The notes beneath the pieces are model-generated. The model was not told the DNA's origin, did no database searches, and saw only the letters and a program-made list of their open reading frames with translations. From positions 124,001-188,000 of the IMG/VR virus record IMGVR_UViG_3300021137_000001: 64,000 nt of DNA; one strand, given 5' to 3'. Positions 897 through 45,496 of the stretch are shown here, one piece after another (within the stretch, counting starts at the first letter, position 1; each line of letters begins with the position of its first letter). Both the position numbers and the translations under genes were made by a program.

Positions 897-1030
897 AAAC
901 AACACTTTTATTATTTTTATATCAAAAAACAACAAAAAGATTGACAGGGTTGATAAATACATATACACTATACACTATACAAATACTATAACTTATAGTG
1001 TATCAATTATTAATTAAGGAACTAAATCAA

Positions 1031-1624: not shown

Positions 1625-1635
1625 TTTGAACTAAT

Positions 1636-1660
1636 AAAAAGGCACTTTGGTGCCTTTTTT
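1636..1660 (+). terminator. Rho-independent terminator
   Basis: AAAAAGGCAC-TTTG-GTGCCTTTTTT. Confidence 0.85.
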
Positions 1661-1696
1661 GTTGACTTTATTTTCTGTGTGCTATATACTAGTACT

Positions 1697-3706: not shown

Positions 3707-4448
3707 TTTAATAGCATTATTATTATTCAGCAGTTCTGTATTTGCTGATGTAACTGCTAAAAGTTATCTTGTTACTGATACGCAAGGACAAGTTATTAAT
3801 GAGCGTGATGCCGACCAGCCACGACCCATTGCTAGCATTACTAAACTAATGACTGTTATGGTTGTGCTCGATGCTAAACAACCGTTAGACGAAGATATTA
3901 AATTAAACTTTAAGTTGGCTAAACAATATCATACACATTTACCACGTAGTATCAAAACGCTAACACGTCACGAACTAATAGATTTAGCAATGGTTAAGAG
4001 TGATAACTTCGCCGCTTACACGTTATGTTTAAATTACCCAGGTGGCATAGATAATTGTGTATATGCTATGAACAACAAAGCTGTTACGTTAGGTATGGAC
4101 CATACCACCTACACAGACCCAACAGGGATAGAAGAAACTAATGTAAGTACAGCACGTGATTTAATTAAATTAATTATCTCAGCTAGGAGTTATTTAGAGA
4201 TTGTTGGTGCTACTAGATCTAGTGTAGATATTAAAGTTAAGAAACATTGGTGGCAGTTTTGGAATACTAATTTGTTAGTGCGTAATACAGATGATGTTAT
4301 TGTAAGTAAAACAGGATACATACATCAAAGTGGAGGGTGTGTTGTGATGCTTATGAATACTCAATTTGGACAGCGCATAGTAGCAATACTTGGTAGCAAA
4401 AATACACATACCCGTATTCCAGAAGCGCAAACTTTAGCTAATATTTAA
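3690..4448 (+). CDS. Peptidase S11 D-Ala-D-Ala carboxy/endopeptidase (PBP7-like)
   Basis: Signal peptide; SxxK (ASITK), SDN and KTG motifs. Confidence 0.9.
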   Translation: MLLRNSLIALLLFSSSVFADVTAKSYLVTDTQGQVINERDADQPRPIASITKLMTVMVVLDAKQPLDEDIKLNFKLAKQYHTHLPRSIKTLTRHELIDLAMVKSDNFAAYTLCLNYPGGIDNCVYAMNNKAVTLGMDHTTYTDPTGIEETNVSTARDLIKLIISARSYLEIVGATRSSVDIKVKKHWWQFWNTNLLVRNTDDVIVSKTGYIHQSGGCVVMLMNTQFGQRIVAILGSKNTHTRIPEAQTLANI

Positions 4449-4789
4449 TCTTTCTTTATTTTCGGTAAGGTATCATCTAACTTAGCGGCTTCGTCAAATT
4501 GTGCAGCGGCAGTGCGATCAACTTTAACCTGTTCCATAACACGATCCGATTCAATCATCTTGCCACGTAAATGTAGTACAGTATTAACTTTTTGATTAAG
4601 TCTAATCAAGTCATTATCTAACATACGTATGCGGTCAATAAGGGCAATCAATACATTATTTGCATCTGTGATAACTGGCTTAACTTCTTTAGTACACCAT
4701 TCCCATACCATACGAATAATATATCCCATACCAATTGTCATAATGATAGGAAAACCGTACTTATTAATTAAATCTGCTATTTCGTTCAT
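4445..4789 (-). CDS. Small membrane/coiled-coil protein, paralog of 6194-6472
   Basis: GFP-TM N-terminus; IRMLDNDLIR resembles VKTMNHDVIR in the paralog. Confidence 0.7.
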   Translation of the reverse strand: MNEIADLINKYGFPIIMTIGMGYIIRMVWEWCTKEVKPVITDANNVLIALIDRIRMLDNDLIRLNQKVNTVLHLRGKMIESDRVMEQVKVDRTAAAQFDEAAKLDDTLPKIKKD

Positions 4790-4790
4790 A

Positions 4791-4925
4791 TTATGCTCCT
4801 ATTGCATAAAGTAACATCCATCCTATTGCTACTACAACTGCTATAAACAATGCTTCGTATCTATGACCAGCACCACATTCACATTGTGCGCAAGTACAGT
4901 GCCGATTACGTTCGCGTACACTCAT
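4791..4925 (-). CDS. Small Cys-rich membrane peptide (44 aa, not in ORF track)
   Basis: MSVRERNRHCTCAQCECGAG... with C-terminal TM; ATGA overlap with the upstream small ORF. Confidence 0.55.
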   Translation of the reverse strand: MSVRERNRHCTCAQCECGAGHRYEALFIAVVVAIGWMLLYAIGA

Positions 4926-5074
4926 AATATAACACCAATACATAAACCAATAGCAAAGCCGATTGTTAAAGAAAGTAGCATATCACTATCGTGCCATAAT
5001 GCTTGTTTTGCTAACCAATTTTGTGTTCTTACATCACCTTCAGGCCAATCACTTTTGAAATTCCACGACATCAT
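4922..5074 (-). CDS. Small membrane protein (50 aa, not in ORF track)
   Basis: MMSWNFKSDWPEG...LCIGVIL; GGGA RBS; fills the operon gap. Confidence 0.6.
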   Translation of the reverse strand: MMSWNFKSDWPEGDVRTQNWLAKQALWHDSDMLLSLTIGFAIGLCIGVIL

Positions 5075-5080
5075 ATTCCC

Positions 5081-5875
5081 CTAAATGTTATCTTGCGGCG
5101 CTTGCTCGCCAGCTGCCCAACGAGCTAAATTATTACTGTAACGTGTAATACTGTGATTTGAAAAGAAGTTAATATCTTTACGCATAATGCCTTTTACAAA
5201 TCCTCGTGCTACATCTTTAATTAGCTGAGTATAGGTCAGGGTGCGTAAATTTCCCCAGTGATTCATATAGTACATACCACCGAAGTGATGGAATGGCCAT
5301 AATGGAACACGTGCAACAATGTCTGCATTGTTTACGAAGCGGAAGTGTAAAACACCTGTTGCAGTAATGCCTTTAATGTATGCGCTATCACCAACACGTG
5401 GGCTACCATATGTAAACAATGCTTGCGCACTTGGCAATTCTTCATTACGTTGTAGTTTATATGCGACGATTGTAGCCATTGCTGCACCCAAGCTATGTCC
5501 GGCACACCAAATGGTTCGTTTCTTGCTTAATTTGATTAGTTTTGGCTCTAAAGTAGGCCAAATATTGTCTACACTTGACTTAAAACCGTGGTGAACTTTA
5601 CCGATGCCTGTACTACTTGCGACTGGTCGTGCATCTAAATCTGCACCGATATCTTTAAACTCTGTTGGCTGTGTACCGCGACATACGACAATTGCATCAT
5701 CTGCGTTAGTTAGCAAATATGCTTGACTGCTATTAACATTAATAAACTCTGACTTAAAGCCGAGCTCTTTAAATTGCACTTCACTATCTTTTGGGTCACT
5801 ATATGCAATGTCACTTAGTTGTGCAAACAAATGTGCTTGCTCTGGAAACGGGCGCATGTTAATCGGAGTTGTCAT
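5081..5875 (-). CDS. Class 3 lipase (alpha/beta hydrolase)
   Basis: RGT, VHHGF, GHSLGAA, TYGSPRVG, DIVARVP and C-terminal His. Confidence 0.92.
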   Translation of the reverse strand: MTTPINMRPFPEQAHLFAQLSDIAYSDPKDSEVQFKELGFKSEFINVNSSQAYLLTNADDAIVVCRGTQPTEFKDIGADLDARPVASSTGIGKVHHGFKSSVDNIWPTLEPKLIKLSKKRTIWCAGHSLGAAMATIVAYKLQRNEELPSAQALFTYGSPRVGDSAYIKGITATGVLHFRFVNNADIVARVPLWPFHHFGGMYYMNHWGNLRTLTYTQLIKDVARGFVKGIMRKDINFFSNHSITRYSNNLARWAAGEQAPQDNI

Positions 5876-6522: not shown

Positions 6523-6551
6523 TTGACTTTTGGGTAAACTGGCTGTATAAT
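6523..6551 (+). promoter_or_regulatory. Sigma70-type early promoter
   Basis: TTGACT-N17-TATAAT. Confidence 0.85.
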
Positions 6552-6584
6552 GCTATACATACACTAACAACAAGGAAGAACAAA

Positions 6585-6906: not shown

Positions 6907-7122
6907 ATGGAAGTTATTAAAGAAATAACTGATTGGAATGTGGACTTTCGTCAACCCAACCATGTGTACTTGATGGATGGGGATAAAGTATTAGCATATC
7001 AAAAATGGGGCGAAGGTGAACCCATCTACTTTAAGACTAAACAGAAGCTAGATAAGCGTAGACGCAAGTTTGAAAAAGTTAAGGTTAGCCCATTTAATTC
7101 GGTTGACATTTTGGTAAAATGA
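6907..7122 (+). CDS. Hypothetical protein
   Basis: ATG directly after the upstream stop (MEVIKEITDW...PNHVYL). Confidence 0.7.
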   Translation: MEVIKEITDWNVDFRQPNHVYLMDGDKVLAYQKWGEGEPIYFKTKQKLDKRRRKFEKVKVSPFNSVDILVK

Positions 7123-7131
7123 CTGTATAAT
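7103..7131 (+). promoter_or_regulatory. Sigma70-type early promoter
   Basis: TTGACA-N17-TATAAT. Confidence 0.9.
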
Positions 7132-7188
7132 GCTATACATACACTAACAACACGGAGTAATAAAAAATGAACGCACAACAAATTACAA
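7123..7188 (+). repeat. 66-bp direct repeat, copy 1 (promoter -10, RBS and first 7 codons)
   Basis: 65/66 identical to 21323-21388. Confidence 0.95.
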
Positions 7189-9583: not shown

Positions 9584-10201
9584 ATGAACCAACCATACAC
9601 ATATTTAATCGGATGGAGTACCCAGCAAAAATATTATTACGGAGTACGCTATGCCATTGATTGTAATCCCACTGATCTTTGGGCAAAATACTTTACATCT
9701 TCGCCTACTGTTAAAGCAATGCGATTAATTTATGGTGAACCAGATGTGCGCCAAATTAGAAAAATATTTACTGACAAACAAGCTGCAAGATTATGGGAAA
9801 CAAAAGTATTACGCAGAATGAAAGTAATACGTAGAGAAGAATTTTTAAACAAGAATGATGCGCCGGCTCCTCCAATAAACAATAGAATTATGTCGGATTC
9901 AACTAAAGAAAAAATAAGTGCGTCTAATAAAAGTAAGCCTAAATCAGAAGAGCACAAACAAAAGATTAGAGAAGCAAGAGCAAAACAAATTAATACAAGA
10001 AAAGGGCAGACTCAAACTGAAGAAACAAAACAAAAGATTAGAGAAGCAAGAGCAAAACAAATTACGTCAGATGAAACAAAACAAAAAATGAGTATGCAAC
10101 AAAAATTAGCAGGTGGGTATGGTCCTAAAAAACACACCGAAGAAACAAAACAAAAAATTAGAAATACATTAATGGAAAAATTTAAAAAGGGTAGTATATG
10201 A
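9584..10201 (+). CDS. Free-standing homing endonuclease (GIY-YIG-like with NUMOD3 repeats)
   Basis: YTYLI...YYGVR; repeated (H/Q)TEETKQKI motifs; TATAAATA promoter at 9571-9578. Confidence 0.85.
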   Translation: MNQPYTYLIGWSTQQKYYYGVRYAIDCNPTDLWAKYFTSSPTVKAMRLIYGEPDVRQIRKIFTDKQAARLWETKVLRRMKVIRREEFLNKNDAPAPPINNRIMSDSTKEKISASNKSKPKSEEHKQKIREARAKQINTRKGQTQTEETKQKIREARAKQITSDETKQKMSMQQKLAGGYGPKKHTEETKQKIRNTLMEKFKKGSI

Positions 10202-17977: not shown

Positions 17978-18571
17978 TTACTTGGACAAGTTATTCACCC
18001 ATTGTGTATATTGTTGGATAGCCATTTCTTTTCTGTCAGATATACGGCATATGATCTTTGGTAATGGTTTACGTAGGTTTGCTTTAAAGGCTTCGGATTT
18101 GGGCTTACGCAAATTTTCTTTAAACTCTTCGGACCGAATATATACTCCGATAATTCCTTTGTTCCACGGAATACATCCTTGTTCCCACTGACCTTTAAGA
18201 TTATCCTTATGCTCCTGCGATCTATTTTTGGCAAGATTAGACATCTTTTTCCGAGTTTCAATTGAACGATTTCCTCCATCGCCGCCGTAGCTCATATTAT
18301 ATCCGTTGCCATAATCAACGTGGGTATTATATTTGCGGATAAAGAATTCTTCCATTTCAAGTAAGGTATGTTGCTTGTCGGTGGATTGATATAGCACAGA
18401 CCAAACAAATGCCTCCCAACCATATTTACGTATAGCGGCATAGAAACGAGAATTCTTTTTAATTGAATTTCTTTTATGATCAGCACAGCGAGTAGGCCAA
18501 GAAGAATCAAATCCGATATAGGATTTACCATTTATTGTGTTAGTGGCTTTATAGATTGAATAAATATTCAT
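17978..18571 (-). CDS. GIY-YIG homing endonuclease
   Basis: SIYKATN..NGKSYIG, R..H, GYNM..GG; start reassigned to MNIYSIY. Confidence 0.9.
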   Translation of the reverse strand: MNIYSIYKATNTINGKSYIGFDSSWPTRCADHKRNSIKKNSRFYAAIRKYGWEAFVWSVLYQSTDKQHTLLEMEEFFIRKYNTHVDYGNGYNMSYGGDGGNRSIETRKKMSNLAKNRSQEHKDNLKGQWEQGCIPWNKGIIGVYIRSEEFKENLRKPKSEAFKANLRKPLPKIICRISDRKEMAIQQYTQWVNNLSK

Positions 18572-18628
18572 GCTGACATTCCTTAAAATGTTAGAGTCCT
18601 TAGATATTACCAGTATCGTGAGGGACAT
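18572..18628 (-). ncRNA. Conserved structured leader of a GIY-YIG gene (copy 1)
   Basis: Homologous to 34964-35020 with compensatory base changes. Confidence 0.7.
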
Positions 18629-18633
18629 TTTTG

Positions 18634-18662
18634 TTGACAACGTATTAAATTTCTGTTATAAT
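18634..18662 (+). promoter_or_regulatory. Sigma70-type promoter
   Basis: TTGACA-N17-TATAAT. Confidence 0.85.
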
Positions 18663-19008: not shown

Positions 19009-19629
19009 ATGCCGAATTTAGTCCCAATGGTAGTAGAACGTACAAGTCAAGGCGAACGTGCTTATGACATTTATTCACGTCTACTTAAAGATCGTATCGT
19101 TATGTTAGATACAGATGTTAACGAGCAGACAGCAAGTTCAATCGTTGCACAGTTGCTATTTTTAGAAAGCGAAAGCCCAGAGAAAGACATTTTGTTCTAC
19201 ATTAACTCACCGGGCGGAAGCGTAACTGCTGGCTTGGCAATTTACGATACAATGCAGTTTATTAAATGCGATGTGTCGACTATTGTACTTGGACAAGCAT
19301 GTTCAATGGGTTCATTCTTGGCGCAAGCTGGTGCTAAAGGTAAGCGTATTGTATTGCCAGAAGCACGTACAATGATTCATCGAGTTAGCTCCGGCACTCC
19401 GGGCACACGTGGTAGCGTACACGTACAAGAATTACAATTCGAAGATGCTAAACGTAGCTTTGACGAATCAATGCGTATTAATCAACGCTTAACTGAATTG
19501 TATGTACGTCATAATACTGCGGGAAAAACTTACGAAGACTTATTTGAAACTATGAAGTTTGATACGTTCTTATCAGCAGACGAAGCAGTAGCATATGGTT
19601 TGGCAGATGAAGTTATTACAAAACGTTAA
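19009..19629 (+). CDS. clpP: ATP-dependent Clp protease proteolytic subunit
   Basis: [25 protein letters not shown] (Ser) and MIH (His). Confidence 0.97.
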
Positions 19630-20942
19630 TGCTTAAAGATACATTTTGCTCAAGTCCATGGTTTCATATTAGGATAGGGCCATCGGGTAAATTTTTACCT
19701 TGCCGATGGGGGTCGCATGACGATACTGGTTATAATATTGCAACAACATCTATCGCAGAATTTATGAATTCTGATATCATGCAAGGAATTAGAGCCTCTC
19801 TATTAGATGGTGACAAATTACGTATGTGCAGTAGTTGTCATTATGAAGATTCGAACAATAAAGTAAGTGGACGTCAACGCCAACTCTTAAAGAGCGTAAT
19901 TAGTATTACAAATTTTGATAAGACATTTTGTGCAAGCCCACATTATGAAATATTTGAATATAGTGCCACTAATAATGGTCATACTAATAGTTTGCCAATT
20001 GATTTACAAATTGATCTCGGCAATACTTGTAATAGTGGTTGTATTATGTGTACTCCGACTTATAGCAGTAAATTATCTAACGACTATGTTAAACTTAACA
20101 AACTAGAACCGACATTATTTAAATCCTTTTCTAAATTTAAGAATTGGGCAGATGATCCAATATTAATGGATAAGTTTGTAGCAGAATTAATTACTATTCC
20201 TAACATTAAATACATACATTTCTTGGGTGGTGAAACACTTTACTTAAAAAGTTTTTATGATATTTGTGAAAGATTAATAGAAGCAGGAGTTGCGAAGGAT
20301 ATTAATATCGGAACAACAACTAATTGTACTGTGTATTCAGAAGAATTAGAAAACATTATTAAGAATTTTAAGCATGTTCATTTGGGACTTAGTATTGAAT
20401 CTCTACATGAAGTTAATGATTATATTCGTTATCCGAGTACGATTGATTCAGTATCATCGAACATTCAGAAATTTTTGGATCTTAGAAAGCAAACTAATTT
20501 ACATTTAAGTTTGCGTATAACGCCGACTATCTTCAGCATTTATCATTTAGATACATTATTTGAATTTATGATTAATAATTCTATTATTGCAGAAAGTTGT
20601 GATATATTATACGAACCGAGTTGGTTACGAATTGAACTATTGCCACCAAATTTAATTGCTATTGCACTTGAAAAACTTAATGCAGTTATAAATAAATATC
20701 AATTAACCAATAGTAATCAGGTTATTATTAATCGCAGGCGAGATGATTTGATTGACCCAGTTATTACAAGCATACTTTTTGAATATAAACATTTCCTTGA
20801 GAATTACCAAGTACCCAATGATGTGGACGAAGAACGCCACAATTTAGTTAAATTTATTAAAGCATTCGAATCATTGCGCAATAATACAATATTGGATTAT
20901 CTCCCAGAATATGAAGAATTTTTACGACAGTACGGTTATTAA
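19629..20942 (+). CDS. Radical SAM protein with N-terminal twitch/SPASM-like domain
   Basis: CxxPW...PC...CxxC followed by CNSGCIMC and GGETL. Confidence 0.88.
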   Translation: MLKDTFCSSPWFHIRIGPSGKFLPCRWGSHDDTGYNIATTSIAEFMNSDIMQGIRASLLDGDKLRMCSSCHYEDSNNKVSGRQRQLLKSVISITNFDKTFCASPHYEIFEYSATNNGHTNSLPIDLQIDLGNTCNSGCIMCTPTYSSKLSNDYVKLNKLEPTLFKSFSKFKNWADDPILMDKFVAELITIPNIKYIHFLGGETLYLKSFYDICERLIEAGVAKDINIGTTTNCTVYSEELENIIKNFKHVHLGLSIESLHEVNDYIRYPSTIDSVSSNIQKFLDLRKQTNLHLSLRITPTIFSIYHLDTLFEFMINNSIIAESCDILYEPSWLRIELLPPNLIAIALEKLNAVINKYQLTNSNQVIINRRRDDLIDPVITSILFEYKHFLENYQVPNDVDEERHNLVKFIKAFESLRNNTILDYLPEYEEFLRQYGY

Positions 20943-21302: not shown

Positions 21303-21331
21303 TTGACATCTGGTTGTTTTGGCTGTATAAT
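21303..21331 (+). promoter_or_regulatory. Sigma70-type early promoter
   Basis: TTGACA-N17-TATAAT. Confidence 0.9.
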
Positions 21332-21388
21332 GCTATACATACACTAACAACACGGAGTAATAAAAAATGAATGCACAACAAATTACAA
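21323..21388 (+). repeat. 66-bp direct repeat, copy 2
   Basis: 65/66 identical to 7123-7188. Confidence 0.95.
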
Positions 21389-23308: not shown

Positions 23309-23440
23309 ATGAAAAGAAAGAAATTAATAAGAAAAATGTATCTAGCATGTGTGCGTAAGAATACAAAGAAACAAAAGAAACTATGGCTTAAAGCATTAAA
23401 GCTAAGTTTGAAACACAAACACACTGAAGTAATTCAGTAA
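23309..23440 (+). CDS. Small highly basic protein (43 aa) immediately upstream of tmRNA
   Basis: AAGGA RBS; MKRKKLIRKMYLACVRK... Confidence 0.6.
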   Translation: MKRKKLIRKMYLACVRKNTKKQKKLWLKALKLSLKHKHTEVIQ

Positions 23441-23447
23441 AAGAAAT

Positions 23448-23783
23448 TGTTGTATAACTCTCAAAGTAAGGATTGCAAGACGCGGGGGCAGAACCCGCCA
23501 TCTCCACCAAAGATATATTAAGCAATATTGGCAAGAAACGCCATAAGTTCGGTAGTATATCTTTGATGGGGATGACTTAGATTCGATTGCGATAGATAGG
23601 ATAAAGGGCAACACGTGGGGTCACGTTAAATGCAAAAACCGTAAATGCAGAAAAAGCAAATACAACTGGTGCAGTAAAAGTATCTATGGGTCGTGGCTTC
23701 CGCTTCGGTTCACGTACTGATGCTGCTGTTTTAGCTTAGTCTAAAACAACCGGGGTAGGACTTACCTGGCAACAGAAACAACC
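23448..23783 (+). ncRNA. ssrA: Circularly permuted two-piece tmRNA (outer ends approximate)
   Basis: T-arm plus CATCTCCACCA ending 23509; hairpin spacer; GGGGATG 5' end at 23568 (G3-U70 pair); tag ORF 23647-23739; terminator follows. Confidence 0.92.
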
Positions 23784-23808
23784 AAAAAGCCCCGCAAGGG
23801 GCTTTTTT
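23784..23808 (+). terminator. Rho-independent terminator of tmRNA
   Basis: AAAAAGCCCC-GCAA-GGGGCTTTTTT. Confidence 0.9.
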
Positions 23809-23832: not shown

Positions 23833-24234
23833 ATGGGAAGACCAAAACTAATAGAAACAGAAGAAGAACGCAGACTACGATTACGAGCTGCTTATAACCG
23901 ATGGATAGCAAAACCTGGTAATAAGGAAAAGAAATATAAATCGGATAAGAAATATTCAGCAGACGCACATAAGCGTTGGCGTCAAGCAAATAAGCATAAG
24001 ACACGATTAAAAAGTGCCAACGAACGAGCCGCAAGATTACAGAGAATCCCACCGTGGGCAGATAAAGAAGCGGTTAAAGAGTTTTATCTAAGCTGCCCTG
24101 CAGGATATCATGTTGATCATATAATTCCGTTGCGTGGTAAAATAGTAAGCGGACTACATATAGTAGAGAATATGCAATATCTTATAGCTGAAGTAAATTT
24201 AAGTAAAAGTAACAAATATGTGATATCCGCCTAA
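23833..24234 (+). CDS. HNH endonuclease
   Basis: HVDHIIPL.GK.VSGLH..EN.Q.L....N.SKSNK. Confidence 0.9.
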   Translation: MGRPKLIETEEERRLRLRAAYNRWIAKPGNKEKKYKSDKKYSADAHKRWRQANKHKTRLKSANERAARLQRIPPWADKEAVKEFYLSCPAGYHVDHIIPLRGKIVSGLHIVENMQYLIAEVNLSKSNKYVISA

Positions 24235-24418: not shown

Positions 24419-25408
24419 ATGAGTAAATCTGAAGATTTAAAAATGCAACCTTTTGATCCTAGTCAAGGACGCAAAGACAAGAAAGTGTCTTTGATTCAAG
24501 TTGGACGAATGGTCCAAAAACGAGTCGGCACTATTGCAACAAACCCAAGTTTCCCATACCAAGATATATTAAAGTTTGCATGGGTGCCTGCTGAATTAGT
24601 TTATTTTAATTATGAGCGCCAACGTTGGCCTGAGCCAAAACACCAAAAGAAACTACGTGGTAAGTGGAATATTCATTGCGTAACTCCGCTTCAATGCCGT
24701 TATAGTCCTAGCGAAAATCGTTACTATGGTGCAGATGGTCAACAACACTCCACTGAGTGGATTGCGCAGTATGGAGAGCAAAGCATGGTTCCTGTATTCT
24801 ATGTTGAGAGTGAGGACGAAAATGTAGAATCGATTATGTTATTGGCACTTAATAATGATAATGAGCCGATGGCAAAATATTTTATTCACCAACAAGAAGT
24901 TATCATGGGTGAGAAAGATGCTGTTGCCCTTGAAAATTGTGTTATCGATGCTGGTTGTACTACCGGCTACAAAAAACGTACAGCAGGAGTTATTACTCAC
25001 ATCAGTGATTTAACCATGGCCCGGGATCAGTTTGGGTTAGGTGCGCTAGGACAAATTTTAAGTAAAATGCGTACATATTGGCCGACTGAAAAAATCGCCA
25101 CAGCAACTATGCTAGGCTTCCTTAAAGTTCGTGAACTTATGATATCTGCTGAATTATATACAGATGACTTATTTGAAGATGTTGTATATCAAAATTCAAA
25201 TTTCTTTGAGAGTAGTGATAGACTTCACGGCGACATTAAGGATCAATTTGAATATGAGTACCCAACAAACTACAAGGGTATGGGTGTTCGTGAAAAAATT
25301 GCAAGCGGTATCATTGATGCGTATGAATATAAGACTGGTAAAACATTAGTTGCCAAACCATTTAGCATTACGATGCCAGTAATCGATGATGAACTAAAGG
25401 CGGCATAA
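24419..25408 (+). CDS. ParB/Srx-fold protein (DUF262/DndB/DUF6551-like)
   Basis: YERQR and DGQQH motifs; later LNN. Confidence 0.65.
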   Translation: MSKSEDLKMQPFDPSQGRKDKKVSLIQVGRMVQKRVGTIATNPSFPYQDILKFAWVPAELVYFNYERQRWPEPKHQKKLRGKWNIHCVTPLQCRYSPSENRYYGADGQQHSTEWIAQYGEQSMVPVFYVESEDENVESIMLLALNNDNEPMAKYFIHQQEVIMGEKDAVALENCVIDAGCTTGYKKRTAGVITHISDLTMARDQFGLGALGQILSKMRTYWPTEKIATATMLGFLKVRELMISAELYTDDLFEDVVYQNSNFFESSDRLHGDIKDQFEYEYPTNYKGMGVREKIASGIIDAYEYKTGKTLVAKPFSITMPVIDDELKAA

Positions 25409-25851
25409 TGGCAAAATTATATAATAAATATGACCCCGGCACATATCATAGCCGTACCCTTTATCGTATAGTTTGCAATACCAATGACTTACGTCCTGTT
25501 TGGGCATATAAAAATGCCAACAAATGGGGTGTAGAAAACGAACCGTTTTTAAAACTATGCGGCGAAATGTGCTCGTGTTGTGGAAGTACTTTAAACTATG
25601 GATTAGGTAAAAACAACATAGAAGATAAACTTGATATTAACACTCCTAGCACCGATCATATTGTGTCGCAGGACGAAGCTAAAAAGTTGGGTTGGTCTAA
25701 GGAACAAATACATGACATAAGCAATCTTTGGATTATATGTATGCGATGCAATTTGTTGAAAAATAATTCAACCGCAGAAGATATACATCGTTACAAGGCA
25801 ATTGTGGAAGTATTAGAACGTACTAAATTAAACAGTATATTAATTGAATAA
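25408..25851 (+). CDS. HNH nuclease translationally coupled to the ParB-like gene
   Basis: CSCCG...STDHIV...NLWIICMRCN..K; TAATG overlap. Confidence 0.85.
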   Translation: MAKLYNKYDPGTYHSRTLYRIVCNTNDLRPVWAYKNANKWGVENEPFLKLCGEMCSCCGSTLNYGLGKNNIEDKLDINTPSTDHIVSQDEAKKLGWSKEQIHDISNLWIICMRCNLLKNNSTAEDIHRYKAIVEVLERTKLNSILIE

Positions 25852-25965: not shown

Positions 25966-27856
<1,891 letters not shown>

Positions 27857-27950: not shown

Positions 27951-29705
27951 ATGGCAAATAGTAACTTCGTAGTACACAATGGCTTAACAGTTGGGCCACT
28001 AACAATATCAGCAGCAACAGGTGATATTACAACAACAGGTAATGTAACATTATCTGGAACAGGTAGTTTAGGCGTTAGTCAAATTGCTAAAAACGATTCG
28101 AGCATTACAATTAATGACACTGGTACTGGATCTAATGTTGTTATGAATGTAGATGGCTCACTTGCATCTACTCTTTCGGCCGTTGGATTAAATCTTACAG
28201 CATCAACAGCAAGTACTACATATACAGATGGTGCATTGGTAGTAGCAGGTGGTGTTGGTATTGGCGGTAACGTACACATACAGTCTAGTAAAATTCTACA
28301 CGTAGGACCGGATTTAATCGGTGCGTATAGTAATGTACTTGCACAATTTAATGCCAACGTTAACAGTTATAGTCAAATATTATTGCAAAATATCAGCAAT
28401 GGTACAAGTGCATCAGCAGACGTTGTAGTTGTGGCAGATACTGGTAGTGACAGTGCAAACTATGTTGATATGGGTATTAACTCGAGCAACTATTCAGATG
28501 TAGCATACACCATTGGTACTGGATTAGATGCTTACACATATTCAAATGGTGGTAATTATGCAATTGGTACACAGACATCAGGTAAAGGATTAATATTCCA
28601 CACTGGTGGTACATTAAGTGCTCAATTACGTGCTAAAATTAATGATACTGGCTTAACGGTTAATACAACAACAGCAACAAGTTCAATCTCATCTGGCGCA
28701 TTAGTAATTAACGGTGGTTGTGGTATTGCTGGTGATTTACGTCTAGGTGGTAACTTATACGTAACTAATATTATTAGTTCAAGTTCACAAACAATTACAG
28801 TTAACGACCCATTATTGTACTTGACTACAAGTGCACCATACCCATATAACTACGACATTGGTTTTTACTCTGCATTTACCGGCGGACCTGCTAACGTTTA
28901 TGTACATACTGGTTTAGTACGTAATGATGCAGATAGCTCGTGGAGTTTATTTAGTAATGTTGGTGAACCCTCTGGTGGGCAAGTAAGTTTAACAAATGCA
29001 ATATATGACCCAATTAATCACGGGGCATTAACAATCTTAGGTGCCACAGTGACTGGCACCGGTGGTACTGCAATAGTCAATGGTGGTACAAGTGGTGTTG
29101 GTAATATTGGTGCTGCAGCTGGTTTATTTAATACTGTGTATGCATCTAAACTACAAGGTACATTAACAACTGCAGCACAAACTAACGTTACTTCACTTGG
29201 TACATTATCTGCAACATTAACAACACAAATTGTTCAACCCGATGGTGATAATACTCGTACATTGGGTGCATCAGGTGTACGTTGGTCAACAATATACGGA
29301 GTAACATTTAGTGGTACATCAACTACTGCTAACTATGCCGATTTGGCAGAAAATTATCAAGCAGATGCAGAATACGCACCAGGTACAGTAGTACACTTTG
29401 GTGGTGAGTTTGAAGTTACAGCATGTGATACAGATGGTTGTACAAGTGTAGCAGGCGTAGTATCTACTAACCCAGCACATTTGATGAACACTGGTTTAGA
29501 AGGTGCTAACGTTGTTGCGGTTGCATTAAACGGTCGTGTGCCATGTCAAGTACAGGGTACTGTACATAAAGGTGACTTAATGGTATCAGCCGGTAGTGGT
29601 CGTGCTAGAGCAGAAGCTAATCCGAAAGTTGGATCAGTAATCGGTAAAGCACTGGCAAATTCAGAAGGCGACGCAGTAATTGAAGTAGTAGTTGGCGTTA
29701 GATAA
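27951..29705 (+). CDS. Tail fibre-like protein with C-terminal intramolecular-chaperone-type domain
   Basis: G/T/S-rich GALVVAGGVG repeats; YADLAENY...PGTVV.FGG...G.VP; late promoter upstream. Confidence 0.8.
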   Translation: MANSNFVVHNGLTVGPLTISAATGDITTTGNVTLSGTGSLGVSQIAKNDSSITINDTGTGSNVVMNVDGSLASTLSAVGLNLTASTASTTYTDGALVVAGGVGIGGNVHIQSSKILHVGPDLIGAYSNVLAQFNANVNSYSQILLQNISNGTSASADVVVVADTGSDSANYVDMGINSSNYSDVAYTIGTGLDAYTYSNGGNYAIGTQTSGKGLIFHTGGTLSAQLRAKINDTGLTVNTTTATSSISSGALVINGGCGIAGDLRLGGNLYVTNIISSSSQTITVNDPLLYLTTSAPYPYNYDIGFYSAFTGGPANVYVHTGLVRNDADSSWSLFSNVGEPSGGQVSLTNAIYDPINHGALTILGATVTGTGGTAIVNGGTSGVGNIGAAAGLFNTVYASKLQGTLTTAAQTNVTSLGTLSATLTTQIVQPDGDNTRTLGASGVRWSTIYGVTFSGTSTTANYADLAENYQADAEYAPGTVVHFGGEFEVTACDTDGCTSVAGVVSTNPAHLMNTGLEGANVVAVALNGRVPCQVQGTVHKGDLMVSAGSGRARAEANPKVGSVIGKALANSEGDAVIEVVVGVR

Positions 29706-29781: not shown

Positions 29782-32700
29782 ATGGCATTAACCAGACCAA
29801 AATACAGTCAGATATACGATACAGATTACAAACAAAGTGTTCGTGTGGCTACTACAGGCGACGTGGGAACTTTATTAGTAGCCGGCGGTGCGCCCAACAC
29901 AGTTGATACAGTTACATTAATATTAAATGATCGTGTTTTAGTTAAAGATCAAACTGACTCTGCACAAAATGGTATCTATCGTGTTACTGTAGTAGGAACG
30001 GGTGTCAATGGTACATGGATAAGAGATCATGATGCTGATGCTAGCGACAAAGTAACAAGTGGATTAACTACAACAGTAGCGGAAGGTGTAACAAATATTG
30101 GCAGAACTTATAAATTAACAACCTCAGATCCTATTACCCTGGGATCAACATTATTAACATTTACTAATCCATTTGCTGCAACTGCGACGGGGTCAGATAC
30201 GCAAGTATTATTTAATAATGCTACTTTATTAGCAGGTGCAACAAGTTTACATTATTTTACAGGTAATGGTGTAGTACTAGCAAGCGCCGGAGTAGTATCA
30301 ACATCAACCACAACCGGAACATTACAGGTAACTGGTGGTATTGGAGCGAGTGGTAATATTAATGCTGGTAACATTATTGGTACAACTGCTACCTTTACTA
30401 ACTATCAAGGTACATTATTAACAGCAAGTCAACCAAACATTACAACATTAGGTGGCGTTACTAGTATCGGTGCTAGCGGAACAACTACACTTACTGGTAT
30501 ATTACAAACTGCGGAACAAACCAATGTTACATCACTTGGTACACTGACAAGTTTGGCAACAGGTGCGATTACTACAACAGGCACACTAGCATTAAATGCG
30601 GCCGGTGGATTAACAACAAACCAAACTACATTTTTATTAGCAAATGCAACTGCAACTACGCTTAATATCGGCGGCGCGGCCACTACACTTAACATTGGTG
30701 CGGCAACAGGTACATTAAATCTTAATAACGCAACTACAGCGATAGCAGGTATTGCCACTGTCAGCGGCATAGTGTATGCCAACTCGGCGGTTGATAGCAC
30801 CACGTACACAGATGGTGGATTAGTGGCCAAAGGTGGTGTTGGTGTTGCAGGCAATGTACACATACAATCAACTAAAATTTTACACATCGGTCCAGACTTA
30901 ATTGGTGCGTATAGTAACGTATTAGCACAGTTCAATGCAAATGTTAACAGCTATACTCAAGTACTATTACAAAACATCAGCAGTGGCACAAGTGCATCAT
31001 CTGATTATATTTGCGTAGCAGATACTGGCACCGACAGCATAAATTATATCGATCATGGCATTAACTCGAGCAACTATTCAGATGTAGCATACACAATCGG
31101 CACTGGATTAGATGGATATTCATACACAAATGGTGGTAACTATGCAATTGGTACACAGACATCAGGTAAAGGATTAATATTCCATACTGGTGGTACATTA
31201 AGTGCTAATAAACGTGTGACAATAAACGACACTGGGCTTACTGTTAATACAGCAACAGTAGCAAGTTCAATCTCAACTGGTGCATTAGTAGTTAACGGTG
31301 GTGTTGGTGTTGCTGGGCATTTATGGATTGGCGGCAACTTATATGTAACAAACGTTATTAGTTCAAGCACTCAATCAATAAGTTCAAATGCTCCATTGCT
31401 ATATCTCGTAACGAGTGCACCATATCCATACAACTACGATCTTGGTTTTTACTCGGCATTTACCGGTGGCCCAGCCAATGTTTATGCACATACTGGTATG
31501 ATTCGTAACGATGCTGACAGTACATGGTATCTGTTTAGTAATGTAGCTGAACCCACTGGCGGACAGGTAAGTTTAACAAATGCAATATATGACCCATTAA
31601 GTATGGGTGCATTAACAATTAATGGAACATCTGTTACAGGAACTGGTGGTACAGCAATAATTAATGCTGGTACAAGTGGACAAGGTAATATTGGTACTGC
31701 ATCTGCTACATTTAATACAGTATATGCTCAAAAATTACAGGGCGTAATACAAACAGCAAGTCATCCACTTATTACAACATTGGGTGGTGTTACAAGTATC
31801 GGTGCAAGTGGCACAACAACTATCACAGGTATATTACAAACTGCGGCACAAACAAATATCACATCAGTTGGTACACTATCAGCACTTACAGTAACAGCCG
31901 CTATTACAGGTAGCGTAAGTGGTAGTGCAGCAACAGTAACAACAGCCGCTCAACCAAGCATTACTTCTGTCGGTACACTATCGGCACTTACAGTAACAGC
32001 GGCCATAGTAGGGTCAGTAACTGGTTCGGCGGCAACAGCTACTGATACAACAAATGCAGTTTATTCAGTAGCGGGCAAAAATGTCAATATTGCTGCTGAT
32101 ACCAACTTACAGACTTGGGCAGATACATTACCAAGATGTGGTCATTATGATATATCTACTACAACTGTTCAAGGTGCTTTGCCGGCCGCTTGGTGGCATA
32201 TTCAACTACAGAGACATTCAAACGATACTAGTGTCAACCTTTATCATGTTCTTACAGCAACAGGATTAACAACGGGTAGTGGAATTATATATACTAATAC
32301 TAGAGTCAATGCTTCTTGGGGTGGGTGGGTACAAGTTGTTACAACAACAGCACTAACAGCAATTACATCAGTTGGTACGTTGACTGCACTTACTGTAAGT
32401 GGTGCAATTACAGTCAATAGTGGTAGTGCTGTTACTGCTATTATCAATGGTGCTACTACAGGTGTTGGTAATATTGGTAGTTCGACTGTAACATTTAATA
32501 CTGCGTTCCTTAAAGCAACAACAGCTCAATATGCCGATTTGGCAGAAAAATACACATCAGATAACGACTATGTGCCAGGCACAGTAGTTGTGTTTGGTGG
32601 CGATAAAGAAATTACCATTAGTACAGTTAGTCATGATACTGCGGTTGCTGGCGTTATATCTTCCAATCCAGCATATCTAATGAATTCTGAACTTGATGGC

Positions 32701-32961: not shown

Positions 32962-34308
32962 ATGGGTGTACAAATGATAAACGCTATTTTAGAAGAAGTT
33001 GCAAACGAACCAAGTAAGAATGCAAAAATTGCTATCCTTACTCAGCATAAAGACAATAAAGTATTACAAGAAGTTGTTCGTTTAACCTACGACCCAACTG
33101 TAAACTTCTTCATTAAGAAAATTCCTACATACAAACAAATTGATACAACAGATATCAGTTTAACAGAAGCAATTAGTCAACTTGGTCAGTTAAGCAGCAG
33201 ACAAGTTACTGGTACTGCTGGTATTAATCATTTACAAAATATTCTAAGTAACTTACCTGAAGAAAAAGCAAAAGTAATTGCTAAAATTATTGACCGTGAC
33301 TTACGTGCGGGCTTCGGTGAGTCAACAGCAAACAAAGTATGGAAGAATTTAATTCCAGAGTTTCCATATATGCGTTGCGCACTTCCTAAAGCCGCTAAGT
33401 TAGATGAGTTTAGCTGGGTTGATGGTGTGTTTAGTCAGCTTAAAGCAGATGGTATGTTTGCCAACGTAAATCATACAGCAGATGGCGAAGTACAAATTTT
33501 AAGTCGCGCTGGTTCATTGTTTCCACAACAACACTTTGCACATTTAGTCACTGATGTACAAGCAACGTTCCCAACTAATACACAATCACATGGTGAATTG
33601 TTAATTAAACGTGATGGTGTTGTGCTTCCCAGACAGTTAGGTAACGGTATCTTAAACAAGGTACAAAAAGGTGGCGACATTGGACCAAATGACGAGATTG
33701 TTTACTTAGTTTGGGACCAAATTGCCTTAACTTCAGTCGTTTCTAAAGGTACTTACAATGTTCCGTATAAAGCTCGCTTTGCTGAATTAGCAACACAAAC
33801 ATTAACGGCAACTTGTATTACCCTAATCCCAACTGTTATTGTACATAACATGGAAGATGCACTTACACACTATCGTGAAATGCTTGCAGAAGGATTAGAA
33901 GGCACAATCATTAAAGATGCACAGGGTATTTGGAAAGATACAACAAGCAAACAACAAGTTAAAATGAAACTCGAAACAATCATTGATCTTATTATCACTG
34001 GGTTTAATGCAGGTAAAGGTAAAAATGAAGATACATTTGGTTCTATTGCTTGTCGATCAAGTGATGGCTTACTTGAAGTTAATGTAAGCGGCTTTACTGA
34101 TTCAGATAGAATCAGTATCTGGGCAAGCAAGGACGAAGTAATTGGCAAGATTATGGCAGTTAAATCTAACAGCATTATGCCACCGAGTGATAGTAATACA
34201 AGTTACTCATTATTTTTACCACGTTGCGAAGAAATTAGAGATGATAAACAAATAGCAGATGATTTACAACGTATCATCGATCAATTTGAAAGCGCAATTA
34301 AGGATTAA
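32962..34308 (+). CDS. ATP-dependent DNA ligase (T4 gp30-like)
   Basis: KADG, HGEL, VWD, EGTIIK, KMK and SLFLP motifs. Confidence 0.95.
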   Translation: MGVQMINAILEEVANEPSKNAKIAILTQHKDNKVLQEVVRLTYDPTVNFFIKKIPTYKQIDTTDISLTEAISQLGQLSSRQVTGTAGINHLQNILSNLPEEKAKVIAKIIDRDLRAGFGESTANKVWKNLIPEFPYMRCALPKAAKLDEFSWVDGVFSQLKADGMFANVNHTADGEVQILSRAGSLFPQQHFAHLVTDVQATFPTNTQSHGELLIKRDGVVLPRQLGNGILNKVQKGGDIGPNDEIVYLVWDQIALTSVVSKGTYNVPYKARFAELATQTLTATCITLIPTVIVHNMEDALTHYREMLAEGLEGTIIKDAQGIWKDTTSKQQVKMKLETIIDLIITGFNAGKGKNEDTFGSIACRSSDGLLEVNVSGFTDSDRISIWASKDEVIGKIMAVKSNSIMPPSDSNTSYSLFLPRCEEIRDDKQIADDLQRIIDQFESAIKD

Positions 34309-34963
34309 TTCTTTTCATGACACCTACGTATTTTATATTCTTGTAGGTGTCAAATTCTTCTTTTGTGACACGTAATGTTAATCCTGTTACCAGATCACGT
34401 GCGCTCACCATACGACTATTAGTGCCTGAGACTTTATTCTTACATAGGTCTGATTGAGTTTTACCATACATTCCATTACCTTCTCCTGTACGTTGATCTG
34501 AGAATTTAGCACAAACAATATCACTGTGCTTTTTGCCCAACATACCACGGGGATGATTCAGTTGGCGCACTTCTTTAAGATGTTGTTTGGTTTCAATTGA
34601 ATGTTTCTTTCCTAGCATTCCTCGAGGATGTGGTATAGTTGCCATTTGTGCTTTGCGTATAATAGATATCTTTTTCTTTGTTTCATTGGACATTACATAA
34701 CCAGAGTTACCTTCGCCACCGTCTGTTAAATTACGTAATATGCCAGTACCATTACTTTTACGCCCATACAGCGCAATAAGTTTCTTTTCAAATAAGTGTG
34801 CTTCGTACTCGAAAAGTTTGTGTGCTATTATTTGTATAAGGTCTTTATTCTTCGGAGGAATATGATTCTTACCCTTTGACCACGCACGTTTTCCTTTGCC
34901 TTTGCCAATATAATATGGAGTTAAATCTTCTCTGAGGTATGCGTAAACGTAATAAATAGACAT
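34298..34963 (-). CDS. GIY-YIG homing endonuclease with NUMOD3
   Basis: YYVYAY...YYIGKG...R, LRNLTDGGEG, GKKHS repeats; start reassigned to MSIYYVY. Confidence 0.9.
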   Translation of the reverse strand: MSIYYVYAYLREDLTPYYIGKGKGKRAWSKGKNHIPPKNKDLIQIIAHKLFEYEAHLFEKKLIALYGRKSNGTGILRNLTDGGEGNSGYVMSNETKKKISIIRKAQMATIPHPRGMLGKKHSIETKQHLKEVRQLNHPRGMLGKKHSDIVCAKFSDQRTGEGNGMYGKTQSDLCKNKVSGTNSRMVSARDLVTGLTLRVTKEEFDTYKNIKYVGVMKRINP

Positions 34964-35020
34964 GCTGGCATTGTTCCATAATGTTAGAGCTAGTGGATAC
35001 TTCAATATCGCGACTAGCAC
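34964..35020 (-). ncRNA. Conserved structured leader of a GIY-YIG gene (copy 2)
   Basis: Homologous to 18572-18628; preceded by an ATAAATA late promoter. Confidence 0.7.
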
Positions 35021-44944: not shown

Positions 44945-45496
44945 ATGTATCTATACGATAGTGTTAAGGAAAATACACACGAAGCTACTCGATGGGGTAA
45001 GCTAGTAACAATCAAAAGCAAACAAACTCTACATCATTTTAAATGTAACCATTGCAATGTTGAATTCACTAAAGCAAAAAATGGCAAACGAGGGCAATCT
45101 GATGTACATTTTTGTACTACTTGTTTTACTCCTGAACTTGCACAAAAAGAAACAATCAAATGTCGAGATAAAAAAGCTGAGATTAGAGGAGAGAAGTTTG
45201 ATAGAGGGTATAAAGAAATATTCGTAGGCAAAGATTATCCATATCGATCCACTAAGTGGGTGAGAGAACATATTGTTAATATGGAAACTCATATAGGTAA
45301 TAAAATTCCAACCGGTATGGTAGTCCACCATATAGATGGTTCCAAAACAAACAATGAAATTGACAATTTATTATTGTGTTCGGTTAGTGATCACAATAAT
45401 TGCCATGCCAAAATAGAACGATTGGTATTTGAATTATATAAACAAGGCTTAGTTGGATTTGATTCTAACAATTTAGAATATTATTTTAAAGGTTAA
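44945..45496 (+). CDS. HNH homing endonuclease with N-terminal Zn finger
   Basis: CxxC...CxxC; VVHHIDG.K.NN...NL......H...H. Confidence 0.9.
   Translation: MYLYDSVKENTHEATRWGKLVTIKSKQTLHHFKCNHCNVEFTKAKNGKRGQSDVHFCTTCFTPELAQKETIKCRDKKAEIRGEKFDRGYKEIFVGKDYPYRSTKWVREHIVNMETHIGNKIPTGMVVHHIDGSKTNNEIDNLLLCSVSDHNNCHAKIERLVFELYKQGLVGFDSNNLEYYFKG

What the first reader, a model, noticed from the sequence alone, without database searches (positions are those of the whole stretch)
23448..23808. Phage-encoded circularly permuted two-piece tmRNA with an unusually long tag
Seen: the acceptor piece (GCGGG-GGCAGAA-CCCGC T-arm, CATCTCC-ACCA ending 23509) precedes a self-complementary spacer (CAAAGATATA...TATATCTTTG). 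The coding piece starts GGGGATG at 23568 and forms a 7-bp acceptor stem with a G3-U70 pair. After TAAAT the resume codon GCA (23647) opens AEKANTTGAVKVSMGRGFRFGSRTDAAVLA* (30 aa), with the stop in a hairpin loop. Known: permuted tmRNAs with a GGCRGW-type T-loop and a 3' ACCTGGCAACAGAA element typify alphaproteobacteria; usual tags are about 10-15 aa and end LAA. Inference: the long, basic tag ending VLA may direct rescued proteins to a different fate from the host tag. No smpB is in the window.
Basis: partly seen in the sequence, partly recalled or inferred. Interest (0 to 1): 0.8.

Follow-up and report, generated by a model that had tools for sequence, protein, structure and literature searches.

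The report
Phage two-piece tmRNA, long tag
A 329-kb freshwater phage carries its own split ribosome-rescue RNA (tmRNA) that would add a tag about three times the usual length; related phages share this long tag, usually close to their own ClpP protease and GroES/GroEL chaperonin genes.

Summary
Window 23448-23786 (+) is a circularly permuted, two-piece tmRNA gene (Rfam tmRNA_permuted 91.6 bits, alpha_tmRNA 71.4 bits). The order is acceptor piece, 58-nt hairpin spacer, coding piece, intrinsic terminator. It has a 7-bp acceptor stem with G3:U70 and discriminator A73. A 30-codon tag frame starts at GCA 23647, and its stop lies in a hairpin loop.

Pattern scans of viral and metagenome contigs found at least 13 sequence variants, all in phage-like, mostly freshwater contigs, with tags of 29-34 aa. 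The helices show compensatory changes. In six relatives ARAGORN independently calls the same resume codon and long tags. A metatranscriptome holds a 171-nt contig that covers only the coding piece.

Phage-encoded and two-piece phage tmRNAs are already known, and a 27-aa tag is known in Mycoplasma. The new parts are:
- a tag family with the conserved core G-x-x-K-(V/F)-(S/T)-x-(G/S)-(R/K)-x-F-R-F;
- its linkage to a cellular-type ClpP and GroES/GroEL;
- a chimeric RNA, whose coding piece resembles betaproteobacterial-type relatives while its T-arm module is identical to alpha-type phage copies.

The "alphaproteobacterial" label is only partly right. The proposed different proteolytic fate is untested.

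The parts
23443..23509 (+). Acceptor piece of the two-piece tmRNA. It holds the conserved 5' leader AGAAUUGUUGUA-like segment, the P2 distal strand UGUUG (23448-23452), the P2 proximal strand AUUGCAA (23472-23478), the T arm (23482-23498, loop GGCAGAA), the acceptor 3' strand CAUCUCC (23499-23505), discriminator A (23506) and an encoded CCA (23507-23509).
   Evidence: Rfam alignments; per-sequence helix check; family alignment A1.
23510..23567 (+). Intervening spacer, presumed to be removed during processing. It forms an 11-bp hairpin that stacks on the acceptor stem in the precursor.
   Evidence: Fold z = -3.6 and precursor fold. Spacer length varies from 28 to 68 nt in the five relatives where it was measured.
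23568..23783 (+). Coding piece. It holds the acceptor 5' strand GGGGAUG (23568-23574), the P2 proximal strand UUGCGAU (23587-23593), the P2 distal strand CAACA (23609-23613), the first PK1 stem CGUG/CACG (23614-23625) with a shortened loop, the tag frame, the stop hairpin (23727-23748), a 3' hairpin (23750-23769) and the element ACCUGGCAACAGAA (23764-23777).
23647..23739 (+). Tag reading frame: resume codon GCA at 23647, 30 codons, stop TAG at 23737-23739.
   Evidence: Translation; Rfam resume-site alignment; the same frame is open in 13 family variants; ARAGORN calls it in relatives.
23784..23808 (+). Intrinsic terminator: GC-rich hairpin with a GCAA loop, followed by a T run.
   Evidence: Each relative has a hairpin plus T run at the same place, with a different sequence.
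19009..19629 (+). Phage-encoded cellular-type ClpP proteolytic subunit, 3.8 kb upstream of the tmRNA. This is linked context, not part of the RNA.
   Evidence: Pfam CLP_protease 221 bits. NCBIfam NF001368 scores 255.5 bits against a cut-off of 249, while the head-maturation model scores below its cut-off. ClpP homologues lie upstream of the tmRNA in relatives.
25966..27856 (+). GroES (25966-26259) and GroEL (26246-27856), 2.2 kb downstream. This is linked context.
   Evidence: GroEL homologues (77-83% aa identity) lie downstream of the tmRNA in relatives.

Best explanation
This is a functional, phage-encoded two-piece tmRNA (ssrA).

Proposed mechanism (the processing, charging and delivery steps are inferred from what is known of tmRNA, not shown here):
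1. A precursor of roughly 360 nt is probably co-transcribed with the short upstream ORFs and ends at the terminator at 23784-23808.
2. RNase P cuts 5' of G23568. The 3' end of the acceptor piece is trimmed to CCA at 23509. The 58-nt spacer hairpin is discarded.
3. The two pieces stay joined by the 7-bp acceptor stem and helix P2.
4. Host alanyl-tRNA synthetase charges the RNA through G3:U70 and A73.
5. Host SmpB and EF-Tu deliver it to ribosomes stalled on broken mRNAs. Such mRNAs are probably abundant once the phage degrades host transcripts.
6. Translation resumes at GCA 23647 and adds 30 encoded residues.

The most likely role of the tag is that of a degron. Its hydrophobic C-terminus (AAVLA) is of the usual ssrA kind and would be read by AAA+ proteases. 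The conserved internal core (K-V-S-M-G-R-x-F-R-F-G) would be an extra recognition site for an adaptor or a protease. The nearby phage ClpP is the obvious candidate partner.

The net effect would be more ribosome rescue and amino-acid recycling during infection, as part of a phage proteostasis set: ClpP, tmRNA and GroES/GroEL.
For: - Rfam hits are well above threshold.
- All tRNA-like features are intact, and the family shows compensatory changes. There are five acceptor-stem variants with G1-C, G2-C, G3:U70 and A73 invariant. There are five T-stem variants, all paired 5/5. There are four main variants of the proximal P2 helix.
- The first PK1 stem is kept by compensatory changes relative to L056 (CGUG/CACG versus CAGU/ACUG).
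- The tag frame is open for 29-34 codons in 13 distinct variants. The other two frames carry stops in the four representative variants checked.
- Every variant ends in a hydrophobic, Ala-rich C-terminus (AVLA, AVLV, LLAA, AVAA, ALAA), although the codons differ.
- Ser13 switches between TCT and AGT/AGC, and Arg16 (CGT) is replaced by Lys (AAA), while the motif is kept.
- ARAGORN 1.2.41 independently calls the same resume codon and long tags in six relatives.
- One freshwater metatranscriptome holds a 171-nt contig lying exactly inside the coding piece (23595-23765, 4 mismatches). It holds nothing on the 1.6 kb of flanks.
- A bona fide ClpP lies upstream and GroES/GroEL downstream in most relatives with enough flank.
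- All the contexts examined are phage-like.
Against: - There is no direct evidence here for processing, alanylation or tagging.
- Codon-level tests do not single out the tag frame. pN/pS is 0.65, 0.57 and 0.70 in the three frames, and variable sites number 10/9/10 by codon position. Part of the conservation could therefore act on the RNA.
- The window copy has a shortened PK1 loop (4 nt against 8 nt in relatives) and a non-canonical T loop, GGCAGAA. ARAGORN misses it.
- The RNA evidence is a single low-depth contig from a close variant, and DNA carry-over in that library is not excluded.
- The ClpP linkage is confounded by shared ancestry. L017 shows no ClpP in the 3.5 kb upstream that was available. 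L027 and L028, which carry long tags, show no ClpP in 6-13 kb upstream. Relatives L013-L019 carry ClpP but no tmRNA nearby.
- No SmpB, ClpX or SspB was found in the window.
Confidence: 0.75

Rival explanations
1. Rescue only. The RNA is a working tmRNA selected for freeing ribosomes, and the long tag has no special recognition role. Its length and internal motif would reflect descent and constraints on RNA structure. Only the ordinary hydrophobic C-terminus would matter, so tagged proteins go to the same host proteases as host-tagged ones.
For: The C-terminus is canonical in all variants. There is no synonymous-site excess in the tag frame. Work cited in PMC8403727 shows that ribosome recycling, not proteolysis, is the essential function of tmRNA in M. 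pneumoniae.
Against: The internal core, with F-R-F invariant, persists across nine AEKANT-type peptide variants carried on different tRNA-like modules and in different neighbourhoods. Ser and Arg/Lys codon switches keep the residue class. No variant in the family has shortened the tag below 29 codons.
Confidence: 0.2
2. Decoy. The phage RNA competes with host tmRNA for SmpB, AlaRS or stalled ribosomes, and so damps host trans-translation rather than performing it. This has been reported for the ORF-less tmRNA of mycobacteriophage DS6A.
For: An ORF-less relative with the same T arm and acceptor stem exists at L001:123-202. The DS6A precedent is cited in PMC11915505. No phage smpB is in the window.
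Against: The window gene keeps the resume context, an open 30-codon frame, the stop hairpin and a degron-like C-terminus, all conserved in the family.
Confidence: 0.03
3. Remnant. The gene is a captured host ssrA copy or an attachment-site fragment, decaying and without function.
For: tmRNA genes are common integration sites, and fragments occur in prophages (PMC9004378). ARAGORN does not recognise the window copy.
Against: The gene is full length, with compensatory changes in three helices across the family. It is 100% identical in contigs assembled from four samples. RNA of the coding piece was detected. No bacterial contig with this tag appeared in the metagenome scan.
Confidence: 0.02

Closest known systems
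Two-piece (circularly permuted) tmRNA of Betaproteobacteria (Rfam RF01850; Sharkady and Williams 2004, cited in PMC9004378)
   Same: The gene order is the same: acceptor piece, spacer, coding piece. The closest relatives of the window's coding piece score 93-146 bits on this model. They share its GUUGUA 5' strand, its GGCAAC P2 strand, its PK1 region and its ...CCGUAAAU GC resume context.
   Different: - The tag is 29-34 aa, whereas the model expects a short ANDE-type tag. The model's 3' hairpin is forced into the tag frame.
- The window copy has a GGCAGAA T loop and a shortened PK1 loop, and it scores best on the alpha model.
- It is carried by phages, not by a bacterial chromosome.
Two-piece tmRNA of Alphaproteobacteria (Rfam RF01849; Caulobacter, Keiler et al. 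2000, cited in PMC9004378)
   Same: This is the window's best subtype hit (71.4 bits). It shares the GGCRGNA-type T loop and the 3' ACCUGGCAACAGAA element. The T-arm/acceptor module is 100% identical to alpha-scoring phage copies L003 and L005.
   Different: - The model's 5' hairpin is absent, and most of the P2 middle section is mismatched.
- The coding piece is much closer to beta-scoring relatives.
- The tag is three times as long as the ANDN-type alpha tags in L003 and L005.
Phage-encoded two-piece tmRNAs of aquatic phages (OM43 phage Melnitz, pelagiphage Mosig and others; PMC9004378) and tmRNAs of huge phages (PMC7162821)
   Same: These are also phage-borne, permuted and from aquatic phages, with no integrase context. 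The same roles have been proposed for them: keeping the hijacked translation machinery running and recycling proteins.
   Different: - Rfam finds no glutamine riboswitch in the window.
- The tag is long and conserved, not 10-12 aa like the other phage copies found here: ANDERFALAA in L026 and ANDSDYNYALAA in L031.
- It is linked to ClpP and GroES/GroEL.
- ARAGORN, the detector used in both of those surveys, misses this copy.
Mycoplasma long ssrA tag (27 aa) read by Lon (PMC8403727; Gur and Sauer 2008, cited there)
   Same: The tag is unusually long and contains aromatic and hydrophobic residues. This is a precedent for a change of protease specificity accompanying a long tag.
   Different: The RNA is a one-piece bacterial tmRNA, and there is no sequence similarity in the tag. 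In Mycoplasma the switch is explained by the loss of ClpXP, whereas here a ClpP gene is added by the phage.

Membership tests
tmRNA (ssrA) | tRNA-like domain: a 7-bp acceptor stem closed by the two ends, a T arm, and a 3' CCA | tested here: met
   GGGGAUG pairs 7/7 with CAUCUCC, the T stem is paired 5/5, and CCA is encoded. Compensatory changes occur across 16 family sequences.
tmRNA (ssrA) | Alanine identity: G3:U70 wobble pair and discriminator A73 | tested here: met
   Both are invariant in all 16 aligned family members, although positions 4-6 of the stem vary. Charging itself was not tested.
tmRNA (ssrA) | Internal tag reading frame with a conserved resume context, ending in a hydrophobic, Ala-rich C-terminus and a stop codon | tested here: met
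   The resume site aligns to both Rfam consensus sequences. The frame has 30 codons. The same frame occurs in 13 variants ending AVLA, AVLV, LLAA, AVAA or ALAA. ARAGORN agrees in relatives.
tmRNA (ssrA) | Pseudoknot PK1 upstream of the resume codon | tested here: inconclusive
   The first stem is present and covaries with L056. The loop is cut to 4 nt in the window, and only a 3-bp second stem (GGU with ACC) can be drawn by eye. No pseudoknot predictor was available.
tmRNA (ssrA) | Works with SmpB | not testable with these tools
   No SmpB domain was found in the scanned window ORFs of 125 aa or more. The rest of the 329-kb genome was not searched, and use of host SmpB is inferred.
Permuted two-piece tmRNA | The acceptor piece lies upstream of the coding piece in one gene, separated by a spacer that is removed | tested here: met
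   The gene order is shown by Rfam RF04321, with all 213 model positions matched. The spacer is 58 nt. Its removal is inferred, not shown. The RNA contig covers only the coding piece.
Alphaproteobacterial subtype (RF01849) | Best-scoring subtype model, with an alpha-type T loop and 3' element | tested here: inconclusive
   The window scores 71.4 bits on the alpha model. However, the coding piece is 80-84% identical to relatives that score 93-146 bits on the beta model. Clan competition in the tool hides the window's own beta score.
Betaproteobacterial subtype (RF01850) | Reaches the RF01850 gathering score as the best clan hit | tested here: not met
   This is not met for the window itself, where alpha is reported as best. 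It is met for 13 relatives, including L056, whose tag differs from the window's by 2 residues.

The most novel reading that the evidence does not exclude
The 29-34 aa tag is a phage-private degron. Its conserved K-V-S-M-G-R-x-F-R-F core would be read by a phage-specified route, either Clp complexes containing the phage ClpP or an unidentified phage adaptor. Products rescued by the phage tmRNA would then be handled separately from host-tagged ones. The tRNA-like module would be swapped between phages, giving alpha-like, beta-like and 9-nt T-loop versions on one tag, to match the SmpB and AlaRS of different hosts.
Probability: 0.2. Interest if true: 0.7.

Novelty: new variant of a known kind. 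Interest (0 to 1): 0.5.

Why it matters
tmRNA tags are short, and their recognition by ClpXP, SspB or Lon is a textbook case of degron evolution. A virus-borne tmRNA family with a tag three times the usual length, a conserved internal motif and a neighbouring viral ClpP would be a natural experiment in re-targeting tagged proteins. It could also supply an orthogonal degron for synthetic biology.

There is a practical lesson as well. ARAGORN, used in published surveys of phage tmRNAs (PMC9004378, PMC7162821), misses this copy and 9 of its 15 family relatives scanned. Phage tmRNA counts from those surveys are therefore lower bounds.

The mosaic of tRNA-like modules on one tag also shows that the tmRNA subtype is a weak indicator of host.

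Tried and rejected
- ARAGORN on the window and on L001-L007 found nothing. In the sandbox it finds 6 of the 15 family relatives scanned, but not the window.
- BLAST of the tmRNA region and of 20 kb of the window against GenBank phages gave no match.
- A tblastn search with GroEL found only distant phage and bacterial homologues (67% identity at most), so it gave no host.
- The single genome-contig scan, with the 26-nt T-arm/acceptor string, hit only a standard one-piece tmRNA in a Saccharibacteria MAG next to infC. That is convergence on the same arm and gives no host clue.
- The Nei-Gojobori pN/pS test and the count of variable sites by codon position did not discriminate between the reading frames.
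- The RNAalifold consensus of the MAFFT alignment did not recover the canonical fold, because the spacer and the 5' acceptor strand were misaligned.
- Column-based pair counts failed for the same reason. I replaced them with anchor-based extraction per sequence.
- I did not use the count of structure pairs or a custom covariance model, to avoid typing a 400-character structure string.
- A full-text search for the tag strings found only unrelated words.
- The Sharkady and Williams 2004 paper is not held.
- I did not search for an SmpB gene elsewhere in the 329-kb genome, because no suitable query was available.

Full report
**1. What is in the sequence**

Window 23443-23808 (+) reads as follows:
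- a conserved 5' leader;
- a T arm, GCGGG-GGCAGAA-CCCGC;
- the acceptor 3' strand CATCTCC, then A and CCA, ending at 23509;
- a 58-nt spacer;
- GGGGATG at 23568;
- a tag frame, GCA 23647 to TAG 23739;
- two hairpins;
- the string ACCTGGCAACAGAA;
- a GC-rich hairpin followed by a T run.

Rfam recognises the region with two models. tmRNA_permuted scores 91.6 bits against a threshold of 47, and alpha_tmRNA scores 71.4 bits against 50. Both cover the full model length, and both align ...UAAAU GCA... at 23647 as the resume site.

The frame translates to 30 residues, AEKANTTGAVKVSMGRGFRFGSRTDAAVLA.

The minimum-energy fold of the precursor recovers the T arm and the acceptor stem stacked on the spacer hairpin. 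It also recovers an 8-bp hairpin with the stop codon in its loop, and the terminator. Its z-score is -4.9. The spacer folded alone gives z = -3.6.

ARAGORN reports nothing in the window.

**2. Context: a large phage**

The window is 100% identical to four IMG/VR contigs from different samples. One of them is 329,321 bp long.

Genes around the RNA:
- tail-fibre-like proteins;
- an ATP-dependent DNA ligase;
- PhoH;
- a clamp-loader ATPase;
- a fragmented DNA polymerase III alpha gene;
- many homing endonucleases;
- GroES and GroEL;
- a twitch-domain radical SAM protein;
- a ClpP.

The ClpP passes the NCBIfam cut-off for the cellular ATP-dependent Clp proteolytic subunit (255.5 bits against 249). 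It fails the cut-off for ClpP-like head-maturation proteases.

No SmpB, ClpX or SspB domain was seen in the scanned ORFs of 125 aa or more. No GenBank phage is similar at the DNA level.

**3. Relatives**

Pattern scans found at least 13 distinct variants of the tag-coding sequence (viral contigs; metagenome contigs). All the tags are 29-34 aa long.

- **Main group.** It has nine peptide variants. It keeps A-(E/T)-K-A-x-T at the start. It keeps the core G-x-x-K-(V/F)-(S/T)-x-(G/S)-(R/K)-x-F-R-F. Its C-terminus is hydrophobic: AVLA, AVLV, LLAA or AVAA.
- **Second group (L027, L028, L036).** It shares only the start, AEKADTF, and ends ALAA.

The neighbourhoods are phage-like wherever they could be judged. 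They hold a virion structural protein, ribonucleotide reductase, tail proteins and homing endonucleases.

Most members of the main group with enough flank have a ClpP homologue 0.5-5 kb upstream (66-83% aa identity). They also have a GroEL homologue 1-3 kb downstream (77-83%). Several have a cold-shock protein gene directly upstream.

Other syntenic relatives carry ClpP but have no tmRNA within 6 kb. L017 has a main-group tag but shows no ClpP in the 3.5 kb upstream that was available. L027 and L028 carry the tmRNA without a nearby ClpP. The linkage is therefore a property of one phage clade, not an obligate pairing.

**4. Is the RNA under selection as a tmRNA?**

I extracted the helices of 16 full-length members by sequence anchors.

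- **Acceptor stem.** There are five variants: GGGGATG/CATCTCC, GGGGGTG/CACCTCC, GGGCCTG/CAGGTCC, GGGAATG/CATTTCC, and GGGGATG/CTTCTCC with one U-U mismatch. Positions 4:69 and 5:68 change on both sides. G1-C, G2-C, G3:U70 and A73 never change.
- **T stem.** There are five variants, all paired 5/5.
- **Proximal P2 helix.** There are four main variants, each mostly paired.
- **First PK1 stem.** In the window it is CGUG/CACG; in L056 it is CAGU/ACUG.

Seven members encode AAA instead of CCA after the discriminator, so they would need CCA addition.

ARAGORN 1.2.41, run in the sandbox, recognises six relatives as permuted tmRNAs. It reports exactly the long tags predicted here. One of them is L056, whose tag differs from the window's at two residues.

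**5. Is the tag frame real?**

For:
- Two Rfam models and ARAGORN (in relatives) agree on the resume site.
- The frame is open in all 13 variants. The other two frames carry stops in the four variants checked.
- Length differences in the alignment are multiples of three.
- Ser13 alternates between TCT and AGT/AGC. Arg16 (CGT) is replaced by Lys (AAA).
- All C-termini are degron-like.

Against, or neutral:
- pN/pS over 21 codons is 0.65 in the tag frame, against 0.57 and 0.70 in the other frames.
- Variable sites are spread evenly over the three codon positions (10/9/10).

There is therefore no clean codon-level signature. Part of the conservation may act on the RNA.

**6. Expression**

One freshwater metatranscriptome was offered. 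It holds a single 171-nt contig that lies on 23595-23765 with four mismatches. That is entirely inside the predicted coding piece. Nothing lies on the remaining 1.6 kb.

This fits a stable small RNA from a close variant. But the depth is low, the data are contigs rather than reads, and DNA carry-over is not excluded.

**7. Subtype and mosaic structure**

The window and L017 score best with the alpha model. Thirteen other family members score best with the beta model, at 93-146 bits.

BLAST shows that the window's coding piece is 80-84% identical to the beta-scoring L046, L056, L045 and L062. Its T-arm/acceptor module (23479-23510) is 100% identical to the alpha-scoring, high-GC, short-tag copies L003 and L005.

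Across the family one tag can sit on different tRNA-like modules. The modules carry a TTCGATT, GGCAGAA or 9-nt CTGCGACAA T loop. The gene is therefore a mosaic.

It follows that the subtype does not identify the host.

**8. Mechanism**

Shown:
- The RNA has every sequence and structure feature of a two-piece tmRNA.
- The family evolves under those constraints.
- It encodes a conserved long tag.
- It is phage-borne.
- RNA of the coding piece exists in nature.

Inferred from what is known of tmRNA (Keiler 2000 and Sharkady 2004, as cited in PMC9004378; reviews listed):
- RNase P cleaves at 23568.
- The 3' end is trimmed to CCA at 23509.
- AlaRS charges the RNA.
- Host SmpB and EF-Tu deliver it.
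- Translation resumes at 23647.

The fate of the tag is the weakest step. The C-terminus is of the ordinary ssrA type. The conserved internal core suggests a second recognition site, by analogy with the SspB site in the E. coli tag or the Lon-directed 27-aa Mycoplasma tag (PMC8403727). The phage ClpP is a plausible partner, but this is untested.

**9. Novelty**

Already known:
- Phage tmRNAs are known. PMC9004378 reports 133 unique phage tmRNAs, 53 of them two-piece and 50 of those aquatic. Huge phages also carry tmRNA and SmpB (PMC7162821).
- ORF-less phage tmRNAs are known (DS6A, PMC11915505).
- The commonest tag length is 10 aa (PMC11915505).

Not found in the literature searched:
- the long, conserved tag family;
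- its ClpP and GroES/GroEL neighbourhood;
- its mosaic tRNA-like modules.

I rate it a new variant of a known kind, of moderate interest. The host remains unknown.

Noticed in passing
L001:123-202 (IMGVR_UViG_3300002174_000117): A non-permuted, ORF-less mini tmRNA of about 80 nt (Rfam RF00023, 49 bits, threshold 47). Its T arm and acceptor stem are the same as the window's. It resembles the CDS-less tmRNA of mycobacteriophage DS6A, which is reported to inhibit host tmRNA (PMC11915505).
   Followed up: partly
window 23479-23510 versus 23568-23793: The tmRNA is a mosaic. The T-arm/acceptor module is 100% identical to high-GC alpha-type copies (L003, L005). The coding piece is 80-84% identical to beta-type relatives. 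Across the family one tag occurs on three kinds of T loop.
   Followed up: partly
window 19009-20942: A cellular-type ClpP is directly followed by a twitch-domain radical SAM protein (NF033640, 266 bits). The two ORFs abut: the ClpP ORF ends at 19629, where the next ORF starts.
   Followed up: no
window 7120-7188, 21320-21388, 6540-6576: A 69-nt element is repeated at 97% identity, with a shorter third copy. Its function is unknown.
   Followed up: no
window 28212-29150 and 30796-31733: Two adjacent tail-fibre-like genes share a segment of about 940 nt at 80% identity. A third gene (45607-47532) hits the same PHROG C-terminal families.
   Followed up: no
window 53182-54429, and 9584-10201, 17978-18640(-), 23833-24234, 25408-25851, 34298-35020(-), 44945-45496, 56878-57750(-): The window is dense in homing-endonuclease-like ORFs (NUMOD3, GIY-YIG, HNH, endonuclease VII-like). 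One sits right after a DNA polymerase III alpha fragment. Two flank the tmRNA-to-GroES interval, which may explain the mosaic state of this region.
   Followed up: no
window 998-5875: A group of host-like envelope and signalling genes: an OMP beta-barrel-like protein (below the Pfam cut-off), a CHASE2-adenylate/guanylate cyclase, an S11 D-Ala-D-Ala carboxypeptidase and a class-3 lipase. They hint at a Gram-negative host.
   Followed up: no
L031:12392-12452(-), L027:400-470(-): The spacers of other phage two-piece tmRNA genes contain tRNA T-arm-like hairpins, for example GAAGGTTCGATTCCTTC. The spacer ends are alike across copies (...GTAGTAT...CTTCTGAT before GGGG).
   Followed up: no
L047, L048, L053, L057, L060, L062 (acceptor 3' end): These family members encode AAA instead of CCA after the discriminator, and they have a U-U mismatch at acceptor position 6:67. 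They would depend on the CCA-adding enzyme.
   Followed up: no
L027, L047, L048, L051, L053, L062 (just upstream of the tmRNA): A cold-shock protein (CspA-like) gene ends a few bases before the tmRNA leader in these relatives. I recognised it by eye from the sequence, not by a domain search. The window has a 43-aa lysine-rich ORF (23309-23440) there instead.
   Followed up: no
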